IMG/VR virus record: IMGVR_UViG_3300023202_000383
Coordinates: 124,001 to 188,000 of that record
Strand: one strand, 5' to 3'
DNA length: 64,000 bases
Under the pieces are notes generated by a model. The model was not told the origin of the DNA. It saw only the letters and a program-made list of their open reading frames with translations, and did no database searches. A program made the position numbers and the translations under genes. Below are positions 8,690 to 43,234 of the stretch, piece by piece. The first letter of the stretch is position 1; each line of letters starts with the position of its first letter.

Positions 8690-8764
8690 TTAGCCCCGCT
8701 CGGCCTCGAACCGAGTTTTCCGGATTTAAAGCCCGGCGTGCTAACCAGGTACACTACGGGGCCA
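8690..8764 (-). tRNA. ochre-suppressor-type tRNA, anticodon TTA
   Basis: minus strand (T)GGCCCCG-TA-GTGT-ACCTGGTTA-GCAC-G-CCGGG-CTTTAAA-TCCGG-AAAA-CTCGG-TTCGAGG-CCGAG-CGGGGCT(A)-A. Confidence 0.85.
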
Positions 8765-9337: not shown

Positions 9338-9415
9338 GGGAGTGTAGCTCAGCTGGCAGAGTTCTCGGCTTTTAACCGAGCGTTTTGGGTTGCAAGCATT
9401 AACGGTGATGCACCT
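9338..9415 (+). pseudogene. tRNA fragments: 5' half of a Lys(TTT) tRNA followed by a second acceptor/D-arm remnant
   Basis: GGGAGTG-TA-GCTC..GAGT-T-CTCGG-CTTTTAA-CCGAG with no T-arm; then GGGTTGC-AA-GCAT-TAACGGTG-ATGC-A. Confidence 0.6.
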
Positions 9416-11433: not shown

Positions 11434-11898
11434 CAAACCCCTCCCCCTAGGATGGGGGAGGGGCTCCCATAGCTGGAGCCAAACTTAGACTTAAGCTCAA
11501 GTTAAATAAAAGCGTGACAGTGTGTGGTTCGAATCCCGCCCCCGGCATTCAAACTAACCCTAAGCCGGGGTAGCCCAATGGCAGAGGCAGCGCGAATAAA
11601 AGTCAAGTTATTGCTCCCAAGCTCAAGCGTGCTGTTCATCGTCTCGAACTCCAACCCCTGGATGCCTGGTGCTGGTTCGAATCCGGCCCTCCCCTTTCTG
11701 GTTTGAAGCACGCGAAAACATCGGGGAGGTAGCTCAAGGGCAGAGCAAGGTATATGAAGCTAAGGGAAGGATTAAACGGAAATGTGGCGATGAAGTGAGC
11801 AACAGGCCAGCGCGGATACAAAGAACTATCTCTTGAAAAGATAGTGGACTTGTAATCCACTCCGCCCCCGTAGCAGGGTATGCTACGGGGGCTTTTTA
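11434..11898 (+). ncRNA. structured RNA with two circularly permuted tRNA-like modules (Y RNA/YrlA-like topology)
   Basis: T-arm, then 3' acceptor strand, loop, 5' acceptor strand and D-arm, twice (11522-11589 and 11671-11747); perfect 7-bp acceptor helices; ends in a terminator. Confidence 0.75.
11864..11898 (+). terminator. intrinsic terminator
   Basis: GCCCCCGTAGCA/TGCTACGGGGGC 12-bp stem plus T-run. Confidence 0.85.
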
Positions 11899-18860: not shown

Positions 18861-18933
18861 CAGCGTTATGCCGAGCGGTTGAGGCGCTGCGTTTGGGGCG
18901 CAGATCTGGCTGGTTCGACTCCAGCAACGCTGA
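18861..18933 (+). tRNA. tRNA-Pro(TGG)
   Basis: CAGCGTT/AACGCTG, A73; CTGCG-TTTGGGG-CGCAG. Confidence 0.85.
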
Positions 18934-19994: not shown

Positions 19995-20067
19995 CCGCAT
20001 TTAGCTCAATTTGGTAGAGCGCTCGCTTTGGGGCGAGAGGTTGCAAGTTCAAATCTTGCAATGCGGA
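19995..20067 (+). tRNA. tRNA-Pro(TGG) with an anticodon arm one base short (atypical or pseudo)
   Basis: CCGCATT/AATGCGG; CTCGC-TTTGGG-GCGAG gives a 6-nt loop. Confidence 0.7.
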
Positions 20068-20102: not shown

Positions 20103-21020
20103 ATGAAATTCAATGAAATCGACTGGGATCTAATACAATCAGATTATGATTCGGGCCTTACTCTTAGGCAGGTTGGCAAGAGACATAAAATTGGCAATTC
20201 TAGTATCCATAAAGCACAAAAATCAGGACTTCTTAAGACTACGCGGAAGCGATCGTTATCAGAAGAGCATAGAAAAAAGCTTTCTGATAGTATGAAAAAA
20301 GCTGGTATAAGACCGCCCACAACTGTCAAGAGAGAAATTTCAAGCACTAAAGCATGTACTAAATGTACATGCTTGAAACCTATTAATCAATTCCATAAAA
20401 AAGATGGAGCATATGATGGTAGGCAATCAATATGCAAATCGTGCCGCAATATTCATGGTAGAAAATATATGTGCAAGCCGCATATAAACAAAAAACTCAA
20501 GAAACGAAAAGAAGAAATAAAATACAGAAATCAGAGATATATTAAAGAATATTTGTCGATGCATTCATGCAAGTGTGGTGTCGATGACATCAGACTTCTT
20601 GAATTCCACCATCTTAAAAATAAAAAATATGAAGTCCATCAAATGGTGTGGCACAAGTTAGAATCCATAGATAAAGAAATCGCAAAATGTGTTGTTTTGT
20701 GTGTTAATTGTCATAGAAGAGAAACAAATAAAGATAACCCTAGAGAGAATCAGAAGCATCGCAGGGCCATAAAATACAAATTAATAGAAGAAATTCATGG
20801 TACTAAATGTGTGGAGTGTGGGCTTGACGATAAGATAATTATGGATTTAAACCATATCGACCCAACGACCAAATTATTCAATATTGGCGGGTGGTCTGCG
20901 GGCGATACTGATGTATTGATTAAAGAGATAAAGAAATGTGAGCTTATCTGCCCTAATTGTCATCGTCTCAAAACTATTACACAGTCCGACAATTACCTTC
21001 ACAGGATAAAGGAGGCCTAA
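20103..21020 (+). CDS. HNH homing endonuclease with HTH and two tandem HNH domains
   Basis: CKCG...LEFHHL...CVVLCVNCHRRET and CVECG...LNHID...CELICPNCHRLKT. Confidence 0.85.
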   Translation: MKFNEIDWDLIQSDYDSGLTLRQVGKRHKIGNSSIHKAQKSGLLKTTRKRSLSEEHRKKLSDSMKKAGIRPPTTVKREISSTKACTKCTCLKPINQFHKKDGAYDGRQSICKSCRNIHGRKYMCKPHINKKLKKRKEEIKYRNQRYIKEYLSMHSCKCGVDDIRLLEFHHLKNKKYEVHQMVWHKLESIDKEIAKCVVLCVNCHRRETNKDNPRENQKHRRAIKYKLIEEIHGTKCVECGLDDKIIMDLNHIDPTTKLFNIGGWSAGDTDVLIKEIKKCELICPNCHRLKTITQSDNYLHRIKEA

Positions 21021-22739: not shown

Positions 22740-23357
22740 ATGTCTGCTGTACTTTCGCAGCCGGTTCTTGTTATCAACAAGAATTATCGTGCCGTTAACT
22801 TCGCAAGCGTCAAAAGAGCTTTCTGCCTTCTAGCTAATGGTGTGGCAGAAGTCATTGACGTAGAAGACGGCAAATACTACAATTACGACTTTGAGTCGTG
22901 GCAAGAACTTAGTGAGTTTGAATCTGAGTTCGAAGACAATAGGTATGACTGGGTCAATTGCGTTGACTACAAAATTCCTATACCAAAAATTGTTCGTCTG
23001 TTAGCATTCGGAGAATTCAAGAGACCGAAGGTTAAGTTCAATCGTAGGAACATCTACGCAAGGGATAAGAACACTTGTCAGTATTGTGGAAAGAGGTTCT
23101 CTACTAAGGATCTTAACTTGGACCATGTTTTGCCAAGATCTCTTGGAGGCCAGAGTTGTTGGACCAATATCGTATGCAGTTGCATAAAGTGCAACACGAA
23201 AAAGGCCAACAGAACGCCAGAGCAGGCTGGGATGAAGTTGATAAGACCTCCGAAGGCATTAGATAGGCCAATTTTTATGGTCAAGGAAAAGTATCACCAC
23301 GATTCCTGGAAGCATTTCGTGGACGAAGCTTATTGGAATGTGACCCTACGTGACTAG
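22740..23357 (+). CDS. HNH endonuclease (McrA-like / HNH_5, bacterial type)
   Basis: VLVINKNY, FNRRNIYARDKNTCQYCG, LNLDHVLPRSLGG, NIVCSCIKCNTKKANRTP. Confidence 0.9.
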   Translation: MSAVLSQPVLVINKNYRAVNFASVKRAFCLLANGVAEVIDVEDGKYYNYDFESWQELSEFESEFEDNRYDWVNCVDYKIPIPKIVRLLAFGEFKRPKVKFNRRNIYARDKNTCQYCGKRFSTKDLNLDHVLPRSLGGQSCWTNIVCSCIKCNTKKANRTPEQAGMKLIRPPKALDRPIFMVKEKYHHDSWKHFVDEAYWNVTLRD

Positions 23358-23521: not shown

Positions 23522-23594
23522 GGGCCTGTAGCTCAGCGGTCAGAGCTGGCCACTCATAATGGCTAGGTCGGGGGTTCGAATCCCTCCAGGCCCA
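23522..23594 (+). tRNA. tRNA with CAT anticodon, Ile2-type body
   Basis: GGGCCTG-TAGCTCAG..., GGCCA-CTCATAA-TGGCT; A73. Confidence 0.85.
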
Positions 23595-27739: not shown

Positions 27740-27821
27740 GCCCCCATGATGGAATTGGCAGACATGTGGCACTCAAAATGCCATGCCGCAAGGCGTGTAG
27801 GTTCGAATCCTACTGGGGGTA
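27740..27821 (+). tRNA. tRNA-Leu(CAA)
   Basis: TGGCA-CTCAAAA-TGCCA; long variable arm. Confidence 0.92.
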
Positions 27822-27823
27822 TT

Positions 27824-28477
27824 GGGCCTGTAGCTCAGTTTGGCCAGAGCGTTCAGGATTGTACTTTTGTCCACAAATTCGAGCAAATATGATAAATGGA
27901 TAAATGGAAAAACGAACAGTATCTTACTAAATTAATATCAAGCGGATTGACTCAAAGAGAAATTGCAAAAGAATGCAATGTTAGTCAATCGACAATAAAA
28001 TATTGGCTTAAAAAGTTTAGCCTAAAAACAAGCAATGACAATAAACCACGACCACGACCACGACCACGACCACAATGTAGATACTGCGGTGACGACAAGC
28101 TTGAGTCATTTTACAGAAAACAACGCAGAATGTGCAAAAAATGCGACGCAAAAAGAATAGTGGAATTGTCAAGGTCCAAAAAAGCTAGAGCTGTTGAATA
28201 CAAAGGCGGTGAATGCGAACGATGTGGATATCATAAATATCATGGGTCATTGGCGTTCCATCATGTAGATCCATCTTCAAAGGATCCAAATTTTAATTCT
28301 ATGAATTTATGGAAATGGGATAGAATAAAAGAAGAAATTGATAAATGTATGCTATTGTGCACTAACTGTCATCAAGAATTGCACGGTGGTGTTTGGGCGA
28401 TTGGCGCAGATGGCTAGCGCGCCGGTGTTAGTGCTTACACCGCATGTGAGTCGGGGGTTCGAGTCCCTCCAGGCCCA
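27824..28477 (+). pseudogene. tRNA split by an HNH gene (5' half 27824-27851; T-arm and acceptor 3' half ~28447-28477)
   Basis: GGGCCTG plus D-arm upstream of the HNH pairs perfectly with CAGGCCC-A downstream; a second tRNA 5' half GGGCGAT starts at 28395. Confidence 0.75.
27896..28417 (+). CDS. HNH homing endonuclease with N-terminal HTH
   Basis: TQREIAKECNVSQSTIKYW; YKGGECERCGY...AFHHVDP...CMLLCTNCHQELH; ACCACG repeat at 28045-28072. Confidence 0.88.
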   Translation: MDKWKNEQYLTKLISSGLTQREIAKECNVSQSTIKYWLKKFSLKTSNDNKPRPRPRPRPQCRYCGDDKLESFYRKQRRMCKKCDAKRIVELSRSKKARAVEYKGGECERCGYHKYHGSLAFHHVDPSSKDPNFNSMNLWKWDRIKEEIDKCMLLCTNCHQELHGGVWAIGADG

Positions 28478-28555
28478 TTACATAATGCCCCCAGTTCGAT
28501 CCTGAGATCGCCCATTATAAATTTTTGTTGTTTGCTATGTTATGTACATTAAAAC

Positions 28556-29137: not shown

Positions 29138-29361
29138 CAGAAGAGAATGCTAGAAAACAGGCGAAGAAAATCGCTGAAAAGATCCAAGTCGAAGCGAGAA
29201 AAGAACGAGAAAAGTACCACGACATTATCATGCGGGGCGGAAATGCCTCGGAATATGGAATGAGAGGAGATGTCGAATTAATAACCGACATTCTCGCTCC
29301 TGAAATTCTTAAAATAAGTAGAAAATTGCCATTCTCTGATGATCCCGACTTCACTTTCTGA
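29134..29361 (+). CDS. hypothetical protein
   Basis: ATGA overlap with the NUDIX stop. Confidence 0.55.
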   Translation: MTEENARKQAKKIAEKIQVEARKEREKYHDIIMRGGNASEYGMRGDVELITDILAPEILKISRKLPFSDDPDFTF

Positions 29362-29363
29362 AT

Positions 29364-29436
29364 GGCACCTTAGCTCAGTTGGCAGAGCGGCTCTCTTGTA
29401 AAGAGCAGGTCGTCGGTTCAAGCCCGACAGGTGCCT
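29364..29436 (+). tRNA. tRNA-Thr(TGT)
   Basis: GCTCT-CTTGTAA-AGAGC. Confidence 0.92.
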
Positions 29437-29438
29437 TT

Positions 29439-29990
29439 ATGAATTACTTTACAATATCGATAGCGTTTTATGCTGGCGCATCTATTATCACTTTGGTAAT
29501 GATGCTTGGCTCATATTGTGAGAATGTGTGTTGTAAAAGAAATTATTCTCATAGTATAAAAGTGTTGTTATTGATATTCGCTTGTTCGTGCTTATGGCCG
29601 ATTCTTTTGGTATATACTACAATATATCTTTGTGATTTGAGATCGAAAACAAAATCATGTGAGGATGATCGCTCTGAAAGAATATCGCACATTGTGTTTG
29701 ATAAGCCAGTCGATTCCGGTCAGTGGATTACTGGAATAACTATACGCAAACCGGCGATTTCTCCAGATCCAGATACAGAGGCCAGATTAAAATTTGATAT
29801 CGATATCGAGTTAGATAGTCCGTTATCTGGTATAGGGGCACAATCATCGGCATCTACTAAAGTATATATGAATGATAGCGGCGAACTAGAATTTGTCGAT
29901 GGAGATCTTGTTAAAGCAGGCAATCTTGATATTGCAATAGATACTATAGAAAAGATCATTGGTTGGCATTTTGATGGGATACTTAAGTAA
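29439..29990 (+). CDS. membrane protein
   Basis: ATG 3 nt after the tRNA discriminator; two TM segments. Confidence 0.65.
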   Translation: MNYFTISIAFYAGASIITLVMMLGSYCENVCCKRNYSHSIKVLLLIFACSCLWPILLVYTTIYLCDLRSKTKSCEDDRSERISHIVFDKPVDSGQWITGITIRKPAISPDPDTEARLKFDIDIELDSPLSGIGAQSSASTKVYMNDSGELEFVDGDLVKAGNLDIAIDTIEKIIGWHFDGILK

Positions 29991-33866: not shown

Positions 33867-34224
33867 GTCGAATATTATATTCTGGGTTGGGCTTCATAAC
33901 CCTATTTACTTTTATCTTTCCGGAGTCTCTATTGATGCTGCTTCTCTTGTAGCCCTTTTTGTGTATGGCGGGCGATTTGTATTGCGAGCGGAATTCCGTT
34001 TCTTGATCTTGTTTAGATTTGCTGGGCAGGTTTCTCAATGTATCGTTGATATCTCTAAGAGCATTTACATCGTCAATTGATAGATCAGCTATATCTATCT
34101 TAGATGCATTTTTTATTATCTCATCTATTATTGTGCCGTTGTCAGTCTCGGAGTATGATTCTGTTTCGCCAATAATTGAGTTGAGTTTAGATTCAAAATC
34201 AGTCGTTTTATAGTTTATATTCAT
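33811..34224 (-). CDS. hypothetical protein
   Basis: 137-aa ORF. Confidence 0.6.
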   Translation of the reverse strand: MNINYKTTDFESKLNSIIGETESYSETDNGTIIDEIIKNASKIDIADLSIDDVNALRDINDTLRNLPSKSKQDQETEFRSQYKSPAIHKKGYKRSSINRDSGKIKVNRVMKPNPEYNIRRDAHMFKQRQGLPNIQGG

Positions 34225-34240
34225 ATTATATCTTTGGATA

Positions 34241-34275
34241 AGAAAAGACCCGTTGATGCGGTCTGCACCAACGGG
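34241..34275 (-). terminator. intrinsic terminator downstream of RNR
   Basis: CCCGTTGGTGC/GCATCAACGGG plus TCTTTTCT on the minus strand. Confidence 0.7.
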
Positions 34276-34339
34276 CCTGGATCCCGGCCAGCGGACCTCC
34301 CGCCGACTTCACGGGATGCCTATTACTGTGTGATTTCTT

Positions 34340-37150
34340 TTAAAGGTTGATCTGGCATGTTCCACCAGCACATGCTGCTTCACCAGACAGGTCAGTGTTG
34401 TCTTCTTCCTCGTGGAAGTCTTCCCAATTTATTTTTGTATAATTTGAGATTAGCTCTTTCCACTTTGCTTCATCTGCGTCGGTGGATATTTCTTCAAATG
34501 GAGCGTTTTCATACTCTTTATCACCAGTAAATGCCAGCATTGATACGCCCGAGAAGTACTTCTTATTTTTCCACAAGAATTCTTTAACATCATCCCATTC
34601 ATCTTCCTTGACGCTTATCGTGTTAGACACATTGTGCGTGACCCCTGGAGATGAATCAGGCTTGGCGGTTCCGGGCGATACCCAATTCTTTTGAGTAGAC
34701 ATGACACGCTCAAGGAATTCAACAGCTGTGAAGTCCGATCTTATAAGTGCCCCATCTGGTGCCTTGACTGGGAACATTAGAAGATCTTTGTTCTTATTGA
34801 CAGTAATGCACATATGCGGATTATGTTTTTTAAATTCCTTGTATGCTTCGCATTGCGGATTTACTCTTATTCTTCTGAAATATCTTCTAGCGTGGTGGCA
34901 ATGATGGCCAGCACCTACGCCTCCAAGCACTAATGATGCGGTGCCGCTTGGTTTGACGCATGTTACTCTAGCTGCCGACCTTATTCCAATTTTGTTTGCG
35001 ATTTCAATATTGGTTTCGACAGCTATTTGAGCTGCTGTCTTCTGAACCTCCGGGCTTAGAGCAATATCTGGATTGTCCATTATACCAGTGAGAGATACTC
35101 CTAGAAGTGCCTCTCTAGTGCATATTGCTTCGCTGACCCATCCAAGATAACCAAAATCTGTATATCCTGCTTGAGCTGTGCCAAGTATAGCTGCTGCTTT
35201 TACTCTGTCATAAAACTCTTCTGTTGTGTCTGCAGTTGCACAATTTACCTCAGATAAATTACATTGCTGCCAGCCCCAGTAGGTTGAGCCGACTTTCAAT
35301 TTTGGGGTCTTTTTGCCATTCTCTTTGGCCCATTTTTCTGTCCATACTTTTATCTGTGGCGTGATTTCGAATTTTGGGTTCAACCCGATTTCGACGCATT
35401 GTCCTATTTGAATAGTATTGATGAATACTTCATTATTTGATGGTTCGTTTAGGCAGTACACCTGCTTCTTGCCAATATATTCAATAGCTTTAACTTTGGT
35501 ATAGTCGTAAGATCCCTGGGGATAAGCTAGCGGGATTCTATCGCCAATTTTTAAGTCTTTGCATTGTTTCCTGATTTTAGTCCTACCAGCAACAGCAGTA
35601 GCAGTAGATCCAGTACCGTTTTTGCGCCAGTTTCTCTTATCTTCAAGGACTATCCATTGATGATTGGAAGTAGTCTCTATTTGGTCACCATTCTGCAATG
35701 TTATTCTATATACCTTAGCAGATTTAGATGTCCTAAAAACATTCGATGCAATTGATCTACCGTGACTGTTGACTATATTCTGGACGCCATAATCATCGAG
35801 AGTCTTATGGCTAGCATATTCTTGGCGTCCTCCGTTTTCCCACAATTCTTCGATGGTCTTGTATCCATCGCTTGTCATTAGCTTCATGTTGCCAGTAAAG
35901 CACGGATTAGCCCCTGTATCTTCGTCATTAGTAAAATAAAATCCAGGCTCGCCCCATTGTCTTGTCGATTTGAATATTCTGTCGTATTGTCTCTTCTTTG
36001 TCTCTTTACGATGCAAAACAACAGAGTTGTTAGACCTAGCCCTCCATGGATGAGTCTCGCCCCATTTGCCAGTCTTGGCATTCATCATTTCGCCATCGTC
36101 AATAGAAAACAGGCATATCATTGCCGCTTCTCTGATGCCGCCAGCGTAAACAGCGTCTGCCAATGAGCACATGATGTCATAACATTCTATTGGTCTTAGG
36201 TGTCTTCCTTGTGCTAAGTCTAGAATGCTTCTGGATCTATCTAATGCCTGCTTAAGCGGTAAGTGTCCAGGTGCCTTCCCGCCGCTTGTTTTAAGAGGAG
36301 ATCCCTTAGGTCTTATCTTGCCGTATGAGAACTCTACGTATGTTCCCGTATGCATATAGGATCTGATCAATTCGTGTGCTGCATCTGCCCAGCCTTCGAT
36401 TGTGTCTGGTATAGCAAAATGTTTTACATTGTCACTATCGATTCTTTTAAGCTCTGGCAACTGATCTACATGCTGGAATTGAACAGAGAACCCAACTCCA
36501 GTTCCACTCAACAGCAACCAGAAAGCTTCTGCAAAAAATTTTGGTCTGTTGCAAACAGAGAATGAGCAGTTGTAGCCTTTAGCGTGATTCAATTCTTGAG
36601 CAGGTCCTCCGAATTGCATAGATCTCATTGATCCAAGCACCTGCTTGTCCCGTACCTTATCCATTACCCAATCTAATTCGCCCTTAATTTGCGGGTATCG
36701 GTCAGCGTGCATTTTGTGCACTCTGTCTACACACTCTTCATAGGTTTCTCGCCTTTTCAGATCTTCTCTGTAGCGAGAATATCGCATTCTTACTACGAGA
36801 TCTTCTATTATTGTTGGGTCTGGGTCTAGACGAGTCTTTCTTAGATCGTCTTTGTGTCTACTATATAATATGTATTCTTCTGCAACACCGTGAAATTGAT
36901 AATCCATCAGTTTACGTTTGACGATTTGTTGAATGTCGTCGACGCCTATTCGATTGTCGCTGTCTAATCTGACAAATGCTTCATCTTCTATCGCTTTTAA
37001 AAGATGATCGAATTTCCCATTAATGTCTGTGCTAGCATCTTTTGCTGCTTTTTGGATCGCTATCTTTATTTTGTCTGGATTCCAGTCTACTGATGTTTTC
37101 CCATCTCTTTTGATAACTTTAGCGGACGCCTTCGTAAGTGGTGACATCAT
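34340..37150 (-). CDS. nrdJ: class II (B12-dependent) ribonucleotide reductase with ATP-cone and intein
   Basis: ATP-cone VIKRDG; SMRSMQFGG; YNCS; NPC-intein-CVEI; TCVKPSGTAS; C-terminal EAACAGGTC. Confidence 0.9.
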   Translation of the reverse strand: MMSPLTKASAKVIKRDGKTSVDWNPDKIKIAIQKAAKDASTDINGKFDHLLKAIEDEAFVRLDSDNRIGVDDIQQIVKRKLMDYQFHGVAEEYILYSRHKDDLRKTRLDPDPTIIEDLVVRMRYSRYREDLKRRETYEECVDRVHKMHADRYPQIKGELDWVMDKVRDKQVLGSMRSMQFGGPAQELNHAKGYNCSFSVCNRPKFFAEAFWLLLSGTGVGFSVQFQHVDQLPELKRIDSDNVKHFAIPDTIEGWADAAHELIRSYMHTGTYVEFSYGKIRPKGSPLKTSGGKAPGHLPLKQALDRSRSILDLAQGRHLRPIECYDIMCSLADAVYAGGIREAAMICLFSIDDGEMMNAKTGKWGETHPWRARSNNSVVLHRKETKKRQYDRIFKSTRQWGEPGFYFTNDEDTGANPCFTGNMKLMTSDGYKTIEELWENGGRQEYASHKTLDDYGVQNIVNSHGRSIASNVFRTSKSAKVYRITLQNGDQIETTSNHQWIVLEDKRNWRKNGTGSTATAVAGRTKIRKQCKDLKIGDRIPLAYPQGSYDYTKVKAIEYIGKKQVYCLNEPSNNEVFINTIQIGQCVEIGLNPKFEITPQIKVWTEKWAKENGKKTPKLKVGSTYWGWQQCNLSEVNCATADTTEEFYDRVKAAAILGTAQAGYTDFGYLGWVSEAICTREALLGVSLTGIMDNPDIALSPEVQKTAAQIAVETNIEIANKIGIRSAARVTCVKPSGTASLVLGGVGAGHHCHHARRYFRRIRVNPQCEAYKEFKKHNPHMCITVNKNKDLLMFPVKAPDGALIRSDFTAVEFLERVMSTQKNWVSPGTAKPDSSPGVTHNVSNTISVKEDEWDDVKEFLWKNKKYFSGVSMLAFTGDKEYENAPFEEISTDADEAKWKELISNYTKINWEDFHEEEDNTDLSGEAACAGGTCQINL
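35399..35902 (-). mobile_element. mini-intein (168 aa), C1...Gln end, at the catalytic NPC|EI site
   Basis: CFTGNMKLMT N-terminus; KQVYCLNEP...VFINTIQIGQ followed by C+1; no endonuclease motif. Confidence 0.85.
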
Positions 37151-41614: not shown

Positions 41615-43234
41615 ATGCCGAAGGATATCATTTTTGATGAGTCAGTTAGAAGCAAGATCCAAGACGGTCTCAACAAGCTGGCCCAAGCAGTCAGAGTGAC
41701 TTTGGGGCCGACTGGCCGTGTTGTCATGATTGAAAGGGATTTTGGAGACCCTATCATAACGAAGGATGGGGTCACTGTAGCCAAACACATAGATCTTGAA
41801 GATAAGCTGTCGAATATGGCTGCAATGATGGTGCGTCAGGCGGCGTCCAAAACTGCCTCTGAGGCTGGAGATGGCACAACGACTGCTACTATTTATACTG
41901 AAGCAATATATGGTGCTGGTATAAAGAGTGTTCTGGCTGGGGCTAATCCTCAAGATCTCAAAAATGGGATGAATAAAGCTGTACAGGCTATCGTCCATCA
42001 ACTTGAGAGAATGGCTAAGCCTATAACCAGCACAGAAGAGATAAAGCAGGTCGCTGCGTGCAGCGCCAATCAAGACAATATTATAGGGTCTATAATTGCC
42101 GACGCTATGGATAAAGTCGGCAAAGATGGCGTTGTCACAATAGAAGAAGGCAAGACGTTGGATACTTCGGTATCTGTTGTCGATGGTTATCAATTCGATA
42201 AAGGATATATGAGCCAACATTTTGTGACCAATAAGGAAAAGATGGTCGCTGAATACGAGGAGCCCTATATACTGTTGAGCGAAGATCGAATCGACGATCT
42301 TAAAAGCCTCTTGGGGATGCTTGAGCTCGCAATCAAGAAGGGCCAAAGGCCGATAGTTATCATAGCCGATGATTTTGATGATACGGTCATGACGACTTTG
42401 ACTGTCAATCACTTAAGGGGGTCGTTGAAAGTGTTGGCTATAAAGTCCCCCGGCTTTGGCGACAGACGTAAGCAGATGATGGAAGATATAGCAACAATAA
42501 CTGGTGCGAAGGTCTTCTCCAAGGCATCTGGCGTGACAATGAAGAATCCTAGCATAGACGCTTTTGGGTCGTGCGAAAAGATCACTGCGTCTGATGATTC
42601 CACTATTATAGTGGAAGGTGCTGGCGATGAATCTGAAATAGAAGAAAGAATAAATCAGATCAGGACTCAGCTCGAATCTGTTGGTGGCGATTTTGATAAA
42701 GAAAAGCTCCAAGAAAGGCTTTCTAAGCTGATAGGCGGCGTTGCTAGAATTGTCGTCGGCGGTGCTACAGAAGTTGAAGTTAGAGAAAAGAAAGATCGCA
42801 TCGACGACGCTTTACATGCTTGCAAAGCTGCTGTTCAAGAAGGAATATTGCCTGGCGGTGGTGTTGCTGTTCTACGAGCTTTCCAATCTGTTTCTCTGGA
42901 GTTTGATTCTAGAGATGAGGAAATGGGAGTTGGCATAATATTCAAAGCCATAGAAGATCCAATAAGGCAAATCGCCAAGAATACTGGCAAGGATGATGGT
43001 GCTGTTCTCGCTAAAGTGATGGAAAGCAGCGATGCCAACTTTGGGTTCAATGCTGCCAAGGATTCCTTCGAAAATCTGATCGACGCTGGCATAATCGTCC
43101 CAGCCAAGGTTGAGAGGATTGCATTGCAAAATGCCGCATCTATAGCTGCCTTACTTCTTGCTACGGATTGCATGATATCTATAATTCCTGAAGTCGCACC
43201 CGCACAGCCTGACGGGATATATCCAGGGATGTAG
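41615..43234 (+). CDS. groEL: chaperonin GroEL
   Basis: TLGPTGR, ITKDGVTVAK, GDGTTTAT, PGFGDRRK, GGGVA. Confidence 0.97.
   Translation: MPKDIIFDESVRSKIQDGLNKLAQAVRVTLGPTGRVVMIERDFGDPIITKDGVTVAKHIDLEDKLSNMAAMMVRQAASKTASEAGDGTTTATIYTEAIYGAGIKSVLAGANPQDLKNGMNKAVQAIVHQLERMAKPITSTEEIKQVAACSANQDNIIGSIIADAMDKVGKDGVVTIEEGKTLDTSVSVVDGYQFDKGYMSQHFVTNKEKMVAEYEEPYILLSEDRIDDLKSLLGMLELAIKKGQRPIVIIADDFDDTVMTTLTVNHLRGSLKVLAIKSPGFGDRRKQMMEDIATITGAKVFSKASGVTMKNPSIDAFGSCEKITASDDSTIIVEGAGDESEIEERINQIRTQLESVGGDFDKEKLQERLSKLIGGVARIVVGGATEVEVREKKDRIDDALHACKAAVQEGILPGGGVAVLRAFQSVSLEFDSRDEEMGVGIIFKAIEDPIRQIAKNTGKDDGAVLAKVMESSDANFGFNAAKDSFENLIDAGIIVPAKVERIALQNAASIAALLLATDCMISIIPEVAPAQPDGIYPGM

What the first reader, a model, noticed from the sequence alone, without database searches (positions are those of the whole stretch)
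27824..28477. HNH gene splits a tRNA and carries a second tRNA 5' half at its own 3' end
Seen: GGGCCTG plus D-arm (27824-51), then the HNH ORF, then T-arm plus CAGGCCC-A (to 28477). The last HNH codons overlap another tRNA 5' half (GGGCGAT-TG-GCGC-AGATGGCTA-GCGC, 28395-28421) and a Val-like CTTACAC loop. That 5' half forms only 4 bp with the resident 3' acceptor strand. No group I intron core is visible in the short flanks. Inference: an intron-less homing endonuclease invaded a tRNA and brought a replacement half from a non-cognate tRNA. Alternatively, the outer halves are joined by protein-mediated splicing.
Basis: partly seen in the sequence, partly recalled or inferred. Interest (0 to 1): 0.6.

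Follow-up and report, generated by a model that had tools for sequence, protein, structure and literature searches.

The report
Homing endonuclease scrambles a tRNA-Val gene
A selfish HNH nuclease gene in a jumbo phage's tRNA cluster sits inside a broken tRNA-Val gene, interleaved with pieces of a second tRNA-Val copy; this looks like a recombination scar that recurs wherever this nuclease family lives, not a spliced or working split tRNA.

Summary
Window 27824-28514 holds four tRNA pieces around an intact HNH gene (27896-28417). The B-3' acceptor strand pairs 7/7 with B-5'. Both A and B are tRNA-Val, so the second half is cognate, not non-cognate.

No piece or contiguous combination is a canonical tRNA. 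The A anticodon arm is 2 nt short. B breaks inside its anticodon. The contiguous B-5'/A-3' chimera scores 23.7 bits against Rfam's 29-bit threshold, while real tRNAs here score 48-74. I found no intron signal, no bulge-helix-bulge and no RNA ligase gene.

The HNH belongs to phrog_2255. In 83 distinct relatives, 71 lie beside tRNAs. In 28 the ORF stop falls at or inside the 5' end of a downstream tRNA. At least five loci show matching orphan tRNA halves around the cassette, and four carry a cognate replacement tRNA or part of one.

Best reading: a free-standing homing endonuclease that targets tRNA genes, like GIY-YIG SegB of T4, left a three-junction repair scar. This is a new variant of a known kind, of moderate interest.

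The parts
27740..27821 (+). Intact tRNA-Leu(CAA), the upstream neighbour. It ends 2 nt before the first Val fragment.
   Evidence: ARAGORN; Rfam tRNA 52.9 bits.
27824..27850 (+). A-5': orphan 5' fragment of a tRNA-Val gene, tRNA positions 1-25 (acceptor 5' strand, D-arm). Junction J1 follows at 27850/27851.
   Evidence: Read. 27/27 aligned bases identical, across one 1-nt gap, to Val(tac) of L127. nhmmer hit to tRNA profile positions 2-27. A contig in runs X2 and X3 continues this D-arm into an intact Val(TAC) anticodon arm.
27851..27895 (+). 45-nt leader of the HNH cassette. It shows no tRNA similarity after position 26.
   Evidence: Alignment A3 diverges from Val references here. Relatives have 40-80 nt between an upstream tRNA and the HNH start in 35 of 83 loci. 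No fold signal.
27896..28417 (+). Intact HNH endonuclease gene (173 aa): HTH, a (CCACGA)4 = PRPRPRPRP linker at 28045-28068, a Cys4 zinc ribbon and the HNH motif. The last 23 nt and the stop codon lie inside B-5'.
   Evidence: ORF; Pfam HTH_28/HTH_23 and weak HNH; phrog_2255 E 2.5e-25; invariant C107 C110 H122 H123 C151 C155 N157 C158 H159 in A1; relatives at 31-43% identity.
28395..28430 (+). B-5': 5' part of a second tRNA-Val allele, positions 1-35. It breaks inside the anticodon (after T34-A35). Junction J2 is at 28429-28430, with 1 nt shared.
   Evidence: 31/35 identical to Val(tac) of L031 through reference position 35. All 29 viral tRNAs with these ends are Val. Alignment A3.
28430..28477 (+). 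A-3': remainder of the split tRNA-Val, positions 26-76. It holds the anticodon arm with the TTACAC loop (15 nt where 17 are needed), a 7-nt variable loop, the T-arm, and an acceptor 3' strand that pairs 7/7 with 27824-27830.
   Evidence: Read. It matches the 21 letters of the intact Val contig of X2/X3 except for a 2-nt gap. Aligns to Val references from position 33/34 to the end. The T-arm and acceptor are nearly the same as in the genome's own tRNA at 23522-23594.
28395..28477 (+). Contiguous chimera B-5' + A-3'. It is tRNA-like but sub-threshold: 4/7 acceptor pairs, and a 6-bp hairpin with an 8-nt loop in place of an anticodon arm.
   Evidence: Rfam tRNA 23.7 bits against gathering 29, E 0.069, three non-pairs marked. 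Absent from the gathering-score list, where real tRNAs score 48-74. ARAGORN calls nothing here.
28478..28489 (+). Short spacer between A-3' and B-3'. Junction J3 lies in or at the end of it. Bases 28487-28493 resemble the first 7 nt of tRNA-Leu(CAA).
   Evidence: Read; inverted repeat I1 with the 3' end of tRNA-Leu. The origin is unresolved.
28490..28514 (+). B-3': orphan T-arm (one stem mismatch) plus an acceptor 3' strand and discriminator A. The strand pairs 7/7 with 28395-28401.
   Evidence: Read. 18/19 identical to positions 53-73 of Val(tac) of L031. The same T-loop occurs in viral Val(gac) genes.

Best explanation
The locus is the wreck of tRNA-Val gene(s), left by a free-standing HNH homing endonuclease cassette that lives in phage tRNA arrays.

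Shown:
- One tRNA-Val allele (A) is cut in two at tRNA position 25/26 by an insert of 579 nt. The insert consists of a leader, the HNH gene and positions 1-35 of a second tRNA-Val allele (B).
- The 3' end of B lies 12 nt beyond the end of A.
- Three non-homologous junctions result: 27850/51, 28429/30 and about 28487-28490.
- No piece or contiguous combination is a canonical tRNA.

Inferred:
- The HNH protein (HTH + zinc ribbon + HNH) recognises tRNA-gene DNA, probably around the D-stem and anticodon arm of tRNA-Val.
- It cuts or nicks HNH-free alleles in co-infecting relatives, and the break is repaired by copying from the HNH-bearing genome.
- The two Val alleles are too diverged for clean homologous exchange. 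Repair therefore ran through microhomology or template switches between the two genomes, leaving interleaved halves. Several successive events could give the same result.
- The ORF runs into the downstream tRNA sequence. tRNA processing of the array transcript would then sever it from its stop codon and keep expression low, as proposed for SegB and the T5 enzymes.
- The RNA pieces are not spliced, and the phage gets no working tRNA-Val from this locus.
For: Anatomy:
- Piece boundaries and pairings were read and aligned.
- A-5' is 27/27 identical to a viral Val(tac), and B-5' is 31/35 identical to another through position 35.
- All 29 B-type viral tRNAs are Val.
- An intact Val(TAC) with A's D-arm and A's anticodon-stem 3' strand stands in the same samples.
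- The whole 256-kb record has 35 tRNAs and none is Val.

Not a tRNA or an intron:
- The chimera scores 23.7 bits. No intron family matches. No RtcB or Rnl2 was found.

Family behaviour:
- The gene is intact with all motif residues.
- 71 of 83 distinct relatives have tRNAs in the flank. In 28, the stop lies within -37..+16 nt of a downstream tRNA start (mode -10). In 35, an upstream tRNA ends 16-80 nt before the start.
- Matching orphan halves flank the cassette in L151, L166, L187 and here, against 1 of 84 in the control. L011 shows the same with two G-U pairs.
- The accompanying tRNA is cognate in all four cases where there is one. L151 is Ala/Ala, both with G3:U70. L011 is Arg-TCT/Arg-TCT. 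L158 is Met/Met, 40/45 identical. This locus is Val/Val.
- 5' orphans end at about positions 22-29, and 3' orphans begin at about 26-36.
- One contig carries 7 paralogs, three of them in its tRNA region.

Mobility:
- Yersinia phage fHe-Yen9-03 has a family member directly after tRNA-Val where its sister fHe-Yen9-04 has 17 nt. Identity is 99% downstream and 93% in the tRNA.

Precedent:
- SegB cuts inside tRNA genes at the T-loop motif, drives recombination in tRNA arrays, and its ORF end meets a tRNA (PMC2330249; PMC13096335).
- T5 hegD overlaps a tRNA-Gln pseudogene by 23 nt.
Against: - No HNH-free allele of this exact locus was found, so homing here is inferred from the family, not shown.
- Nuclease activity and target site are untested. 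Pfam HNH is below its cut-off.
- No single simple event gives the interleaved order. Any path needs three illegitimate junctions.
- tRNA debris also occurs in this array away from any nuclease gene (9340-9380, 11524-11546, 11668-11689), so some pieces could be older, unrelated scars.
- There are no RNA data, so non-function of the RNA pieces is an inference from structure.
- The record is only about 70% complete, so a Val tRNA could lie in the missing part.
Confidence: 0.75

Rival explanations
1. Ordinary tRNA-array debris. The Val fragments arose by duplication, deletion and decay unrelated to the nuclease, and the HNH gene merely landed in or next to dead DNA.
For: Fragments with no nuclease nearby exist in the same window and in other arrays. 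tRNA arrays recombine readily (PMC13096335).
Against: - Two of the three junctions abut the cassette directly.
- The same split-pair picture recurs around relatives of this HNH in at least 5 independent loci, against 1 of 84 in the control.
- The partner tRNA is cognate in 4 of 4 cases.
- Breakpoints cluster at the D-stem and anticodon arm.
Confidence: 0.12
2. The contiguous chimera 28395-28477, or B-5' closed by B-3' at 28490-28514, is a working tRNA-like RNA. Candidates are a tRNA with an expanded anticodon loop, a decoy for anticodon nucleases, or an RNase P substrate that regulates the HNH message.
For: The D-arm and T-arm are intact. A clean 6-bp hairpin (28423-28428 with 28437-28442) sits where the anticodon arm should be. 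B-5' and B-3' pair 7/7 and fold into a cloverleaf-like shape. Odd-looped tRNAs exist in viral contigs (L058, L073). Phage tRNAs do counter host nucleases (titles and abstracts).
Against: - 23.7 bits against 48-74 for real tRNAs here.
- Three acceptor mismatches, and no U33-type loop.
- The fold is no better than shuffles (z -1.1).
- The hairpin is made by the junction of two different alleles.
- No conserved relative is known.
Confidence: 0.07
3. A true split tRNA-Val. The outer halves are joined after transcription by protein-mediated or unknown splicing, or they act as a two-piece tRNA held by the 7-bp acceptor stem.
For: The acceptor pairing is a perfect 7/7, extendable by 4 of 5 flanking pairs (inverted repeat I2). 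The D-arm and T-arm are complete. The genome has no other Val tRNA. Split pairs recur in the family.
Against: - The insertion is at 25/26, not in the anticodon loop.
- The anticodon arm of the 3' piece is 2 nt short, so even exact removal of 27851-28429 gives no canonical arm.
- No intron model matches. The junction sequences cannot form a bulge-helix-bulge (read).
- No RtcB or Rnl2 was found. The Rnl1 search was uninformative.
- In L166 and L187 the halves also lack a matching anticodon stem.
- In L011 and L151 a whole cognate tRNA sits in the insert, which makes splicing pointless.
Confidence: 0.04
4. Assembly chimera. The two sides of the (CCACGA)n repeat inside the ORF were joined wrongly.
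For: Logan contigs of X1 and X2 break at 28045-28073.
Against: An X3 contig spans 27310-28325 with 0 differences. The reading frame and domain order match relatives across the repeat. Junctions J2 and J3 lie on one contig.
Confidence: 0.01

Closest known systems
SegB of phage T4/T6 (GIY-YIG free-standing homing endonuclease in the tRNA cluster; PMC2330249, PMC13096335)
   Same: It is free-standing and lives in a phage tRNA array. It cuts inside tRNA genes, drives gene conversion and recombination between tRNA genes, and its ORF end meets the next tRNA. Its family is statistically tied to tRNAs across phages.
   Different: The nuclease fold differs (GIY-YIG, not HNH). SegB recognises the T-loop motif and sits between intact tRNAs. 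Here the breakpoints lie at the D-stem and anticodon arm, and the cassette lies inside a tRNA gene with matched orphan halves. The target of this enzyme is untested.
Phage T5 HNH endonucleases in the tRNA region (hegA/C/D; F-TflI, F-TflII, F-TflIV as cited in PMC2330249)
   Same: These are HNH genes between tRNAs. hegD overlaps a tRNA-Gln pseudogene by 23 nt and hegC overlaps tRNA-Ser by 14 nt, the same ORF-into-tRNA layout.
   Different: They are not detectably homologous beyond the HNH motif (best blastp E 0.047) and have a different domain make-up. No matched split halves are annotated there.
Homing endonuclease ORFs in fungal mitochondria that arrive with a replacement 3' end of the host gene and displace the resident end as a pseudogene (e.g. 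Allomyces atp6; recalled from memory, not checked here)
   Same: A mobile nuclease gene travels with a copy of part of its target gene. The resident part is left behind as an orphan.
   Different: Those targets are protein genes and the hybrid gene works. Here the target is a tRNA and the hybrid looks dead. In L011 and L151 the cargo is a whole tRNA.
Split and intron-bearing tRNA genes (Nanoarchaeum split tRNAs, archaeal BHB introns, bacterial group I introns in tRNA anticodon loops; PMC4090602 listed, otherwise textbook knowledge)
   Same: Two tRNA halves are separated by other sequence, and the acceptor strands are complementary.
   Different: There is no BHB, no group I core and no ligase. 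The insertion is at 25/26, the anticodon arm is defective, and the organism is a bacteriophage.

Membership tests
Free-standing HNH homing endonuclease of phages | HNH (beta-beta-alpha-metal) motif with catalytic His/Asn and zinc-binding Cys | tested here: met
   phrog_2255 E 2.5e-25. Invariant C107 C110 H122 H123 C151 C155 N157 C158 H159 in A1. Pfam HNH is only 19 bits against a 21.4 cut-off.
Free-standing HNH homing endonuclease of phages | Not inside an intron or intein | tested here: met
   No intron family at E<=10 or at gathering score. The ORF has its own start and a 45-nt leader.
Free-standing HNH homing endonuclease of phages | Presence/absence polymorphism between close relatives at the same site | tested here: inconclusive
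   Met for a family member (fHe-Yen9-03 against -04: 710 against 17 nt). No HNH-free allele of this locus was found.
Free-standing HNH homing endonuclease of phages | Site-specific cleavage of the endonuclease-free allele and preferential inheritance | not testable with these tools
   Needs enzyme assays or phage crosses.
SegB-like tRNA-array homing endonucleases | GIY-YIG catalytic domain | tested here: not met
   Pfam and PHROG hits are HTH and HNH only. It works like SegB but is not a member.
SegB-like tRNA-array homing endonucleases | Statistical association of the gene with tRNA genes | tested here: met
   71 of 83 distinct loci have a tRNA in the flank, and 28 have the stop at a tRNA 5' end.
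Functional tRNA (Rfam RF00005) | Score at or above the gathering threshold; 7-bp acceptor stem; 5-bp stem and 7-nt anticodon loop | tested here: not met
   23.7 against 29 bits with 3 acceptor non-pairs. ARAGORN makes no call. The A arm is 15 nt instead of 17.
Group I intron in a tRNA gene | Conserved catalytic core; insertion in the anticodon loop; exons join to a canonical tRNA | tested here: not met
   No Intron_gpI hit. Only 45 + 12 nt are non-coding. The insertion is at 25/26, and the exon anticodon arm is 2 nt short.
Archaeal-type split / BHB-intron tRNA | Bulge-helix-bulge at the junctions, plus a splicing endonuclease and RtcB-type ligase | tested here: not met
   The junction sequences are not complementary (read). 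No RtcB or Rnl2 was found. The Rnl1 search was uninformative because its control was silent. The splicing endonuclease itself was not searched.

The most novel reading that the evidence does not exclude
This HNH family (phrog_2255) may be a dedicated parasite of tRNA genes. It would home into the D-stem/anticodon-arm region of a specific tRNA gene and travel with a cognate tRNA, whole or in part, that replaces the gene it breaks. The orphan halves would then serve as homology arms for the next round. The Val locus here would be one such event gone wrong, and small indels in anticodon arms next to these genes would be immunity or repair footprints. Examples are the arm 2 nt short here, the 6-nt loop at 19995-20067, and the truncated loop in L166.
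Probability: 0.35. Interest if true: 0.6.

Novelty: new variant of a known kind. Interest (0 to 1): 0.45.

Why it matters
Phage tRNA arrays are now seen as counter-defence cargo, and SegB shows that a homing nuclease can reshape them. This locus points to a second, unrelated and widespread nuclease family tied to tRNA arrays in many uncultured and cultured jumbo phages. Its members sometimes land inside a tRNA gene, break it, and bring a cognate copy along.

Three things would follow if the reading holds:
- It would explain part of the tRNA pseudogenes and fragments that annotators see in phage arrays.
- It would give a testable target, the D/anticodon-arm DNA of tRNA-Val.
- It warns against reading matched tRNA halves in phages as split or spliced genes.

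For this phage the practical meaning is small: the locus most likely yields no tRNA-Val.

Tried and rejected
- **Close relatives of this locus.** Exact and gapped DNA patterns in viral contigs found nothing. In metagenome contigs one pattern found nothing and the other only two unrelated bacterial tRNA-Ile loci. The upstream 148-aa ORF has no relatives in viral contigs. blastn against cultured phages matched only single tRNAs and the HNH core. Relatives cannot be drawn for a virus record.
- **HNH-free allele in reads.** The four runs come from one study and are all contigs. They show only the HNH-bearing form, and the 'joints' are other organisms' tRNAs. No RNA run exists.
- **Leader homology.** An alignment of leaders shows a shared motif just before the start codon in L011, L151, L153 and L165. 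The window's leader does not align convincingly, so I make no claim.
- **Promoter and terminator scan.** No better than shuffles.
- **Folds.** Folds of the 5' piece and of B-5'..B-3' are not better than shuffles.
- **T5 heg proteins as homologs.** Rejected.
- **PDB sequence search.** Only HTH-level hits.
- **A single-event history.** I tried insertion, Campbell-type crossover, tandem duplication plus deletion, and excision plus re-insertion on paper. Every path needs three illegitimate junctions, so the order of events is left open.
- The joined forms were judged by reading the pieces exon by exon. The large protein searches were not needed, because PHROG and locus searches placed the protein.

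Full report
**Setting.** The window is bases 124001-188000 of a 256.5-kb IMG/VR virus record that is about 70% complete. It carries 26 ARAGORN tRNAs in its first 31 kb and 35 in the whole record, and none of them is tRNA-Val. Rfam at gathering score finds only tRNAs in the window, scoring 48-74 bits. An intein-bearing ATP-cone protein and a GroEL fit a jumbo phage.

**Observation.**
- A 5' acceptor strand and D-arm lie at 27824-27850.
- A 173-aa ORF runs 27896-28417.
- A T-arm and the complementary acceptor strand end at 28477.
- A second tRNA 5' half at 28395 overlaps the last 23 nt of the ORF.

The ORF has an N-terminal helix-turn-helix and a weak Pfam HNH match, but a strong match to phrog_2255 'HNH endonuclease' (E 2.5e-25). 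Every Cys, His and Asn of the zinc-ribbon and HNH motifs is invariant against ten relatives, so the gene looks intact. cmscan sees the contiguous second-half-plus-T-arm stretch (28395-28477) as a tRNA at only 23.7 bits (threshold 29), with three acceptor non-pairs.

**What was missed.** Twelve bases after 28477 lies another T-arm and acceptor strand (28490-28514). Its seven acceptor bases are the exact partner of the second 5' half. The order is therefore A5' - HNH - B5' - A3' - B3': two tRNAs interleaved.

**Identity of the pieces.**
- All 29 viral-contig tRNAs that start and end like B are tRNA-Val. B5' is 31/35 identical to one of them, up to reference position 35 inside the anticodon.
- tRNAs with A-type ends are mostly CAU-anticodon tRNAs. 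One, in L127, is a Val(tac) whose first 27 bases equal A5' apart from one extra T in the D-loop.
- In the runs that hold this phage, another contig carries A's D-arm (20 of 20 bases). It continues with 21 letters that spell a canonical Val(TAC) anticodon arm, then a T-arm.
- Bases 28430-28449 of the window match those letters except for a 2-nt gap. So A is a tRNA-Val(UAC) gene split between positions 25 and 26, and its anticodon arm is 15 nt long where 17 are needed.
- B is a second Val allele, broken after T34-A35 and resumed only at its T-arm.
- The neat 6-bp hairpin at 28423-28442 is made by the B/A junction itself.

**Not an intron, not a split gene in the archaeal sense.**
- No group I or II model matches, even at E 10.
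- The non-coding parts of the insert are 45 and 12 nt.
- The insertion point is 25/26, not the anticodon loop.
- The two junction sequences are not complementary, so no bulge-helix-bulge can form (read).
- No RtcB or Rnl2 gene is found in the record. The Rnl1 search was uninformative because its control was silent.
- Folds of the pieces are no better than shuffles.

The joined forms were judged by reading the two exons separately.

**Population data.** Three of the four runs of the one study that holds the stretch hold this arrangement without a single difference. The fourth holds only short matching pieces. One contig spans the (CCACGA)4 repeat inside the ORF where other contigs break. No HNH-free version of the locus appears, and there are no RNA runs. 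Searches for near relatives of the locus in viral and metagenome contigs failed.

**The nuclease family.** The first search gave 17 relatives at 31-41% identity, 16 of them among tRNA genes. A profile search gave 80 more loci. Among 83 distinct loci:
- 71 have a tRNA within the flank;
- 28 have the ORF stop within -37 to +16 nt of the start of a downstream tRNA, most often -10, where the stop is U8-A9-G10 of the tRNA;
- 35 have an upstream tRNA ending 16-80 nt before the start.

Cultured phages show the same. Pseudomonas phage M5.1 has the gene between tRNA-Cys and tRNA-Gly with a 15-nt overlap, and Yersinia and Erwinia jumbo phages have it between tRNAs. One contig holds seven paralogs, three of them in its tRNA region.

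**Splitting recurs.** A strict scan looked for an orphan T-arm plus acceptor strand downstream whose 7-mer partner lies upstream next to a D-arm start. It finds L151, L166, L187 and this window, against 1 of 84 with a reversed-strand control. L011 qualifies with two G-U pairs.
- In L151 the split tRNA and a whole tRNA lying between its 5' half and the HNH are both tRNA-Ala, each with the G3:U70 pair.
- In L011 both are Arg(TCT).
- In L158 a whole Met(cat) precedes the HNH, and a Met 3' fragment, 40/45 identical, follows it.
- In L166 the split tRNA is again Val(TAC), with a truncated loop.

The 5' orphans end at about positions 22-29, and the 3' orphans begin at about 26-36. So the accompanying tRNA is cognate in four of four cases, and the lesions cluster at the D-stem and anticodon arm.

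**Mobility in the family.** Yersinia phages fHe-Yen9-03 and -04 belong to one species. The former has a family member (g463) directly after tRNA-Val, where the latter has 17 nt. Downstream identity is 99%. The tRNA itself is 93% identical, with changes only in the T-arm and the closing acceptor pair.

**Known parallels.**
- T4 SegB, a GIY-YIG enzyme in the tRNA cluster, recognises the T-loop motif, cuts inside tRNA genes and drives preferential inheritance of the region. Its ORF end meets tRNA-Arg, and processing there was proposed to limit expression (PMC2330249).
- In T6 it drives recombination-dependent amplification of tRNA segments, and its family is tied to tRNAs across phages (PMC13096335).
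- In T5, hegD overlaps a tRNA-Gln pseudogene by 23 nt, but the T5 proteins are not homologs of this one.
- Full-text searches found no paper describing tRNA genes split by such genes in phages.

**Mechanism.** I conclude that a free-standing HNH homing endonuclease cassette entered a tRNA-Val gene. The break was repaired from a genome carrying a diverged Val allele next to the nuclease gene. With little homology, repair ran through microhomology or template switches and left three illegitimate junctions: 27850/51, 28429/30 (1 nt shared), and about 28487-28490.

- Shown: the pieces, their identities, the junctions, the family's habits.
- Inferred: the cleavage specificity, the repair route and the lack of function.

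I could not find a one-step history. All the paths I tried need three novel junctions.

**Rivals.**
- Unrelated array debris (0.12). Fragments do occur away from nucleases, but the recurrence, the cognate pairing and the abutting junctions argue against it.
- A working odd tRNA-like RNA or processing signal (0.07).
- A truly spliced or two-piece tRNA-Val (0.04).
- Mis-assembly (0.01).

**Verdict.** The thing is a new variant of a known kind: a tRNA-array homing endonuclease, here of the HNH type and lying inside the gene. The single locus is of modest interest. The family-level pattern is worth a bench test.

Noticed in passing
window 19995-20067 and 20103-21020: A tRNA-Pro(UGG)-like gene scores 62.9 bits in Rfam, but its anticodon loop has only 6 nt, so ARAGORN reads a 2-letter anticodon. 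After 35 nt comes a 305-aa ORF with two HNH-like modules of the same phrog_2255. An intact tRNA-Pro(UGG) lies at 18861-18933. This may be a second nuclease-adjacent anticodon-loop lesion in the same genome.
   Followed up: partly
window 8690-8764 (- strand): This is the only minus-strand tRNA in the array (Rfam 55.9 bits). Its anticodon is UUA, which would read the UAA stop codon. Whether it is a suppressor or hints at recoding was not examined.
   Followed up: no
window 9340-9380, 11524-11546, 11668-11689: Further tRNA debris with no nuclease gene nearby. One piece is a 5' two-thirds fragment of a Lys(UUU)-like tRNA between the two Lys genes. Two others are orphan T-arm/acceptor fragments.
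   Followed up: partly
window 28045-28068: A (CCACGA)4 repeat inside the HNH ORF encodes a PRPRPRPRP linker between the HTH and the zinc ribbon. Relatives have unrelated linkers of varying length. Short-read contigs of two runs break here.
   Followed up: partly
window 22740-23357: A third HNH gene (205 aa, phrog_16726, a different family) lies between tRNA-Arg(CCU) and the CAU-anticodon tRNA at 23522-23594. That tRNA shares its acceptor stem and T-stem with piece A.
   Followed up: no
window 34340-37150 (- strand): A 935-aa protein has an ATP-cone and an intein splicing domain, probably a ribonucleotide reductase interrupted by an intein. It is another mobile element in the same phage. A GroEL-type chaperonin is at 41615-43234.
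   Followed up: no
L135 1103-1175 and L137 1110-1179 (Yersinia phage fHe-Yen9-04, Erwinia phage Kaldavass): About 300 nt upstream of the family's HNH gene, a tRNA 3' fragment is followed within about 10 nt by a tRNA 5' fragment with a Val-like D-arm. This unannotated debris is conserved between two cultured jumbo phages.
   Followed up: no
L148 (phage T5, record 29344-29978, 34006-34524): hegD overlaps the annotated tRNA-Gln2 pseudogene by 23 nt. The 172-aa hypothetical ORF T5.069 overlaps tRNA-Asn by 24 nt. Several 'tRNA-like stable RNAs of unknown function' are annotated in the same array.
   Followed up: partly
L013 2832-2915; L017 3517-3602; L018 2845-2930: tRNAs next to family members carry unusually long variable regions for their isotype: Val(tac) 84 nt, Ile(gat) 86 nt, Asn(gtt) 86 nt. 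These may be insertions at old break sites or true type-II-like phage tRNAs.
   Followed up: no
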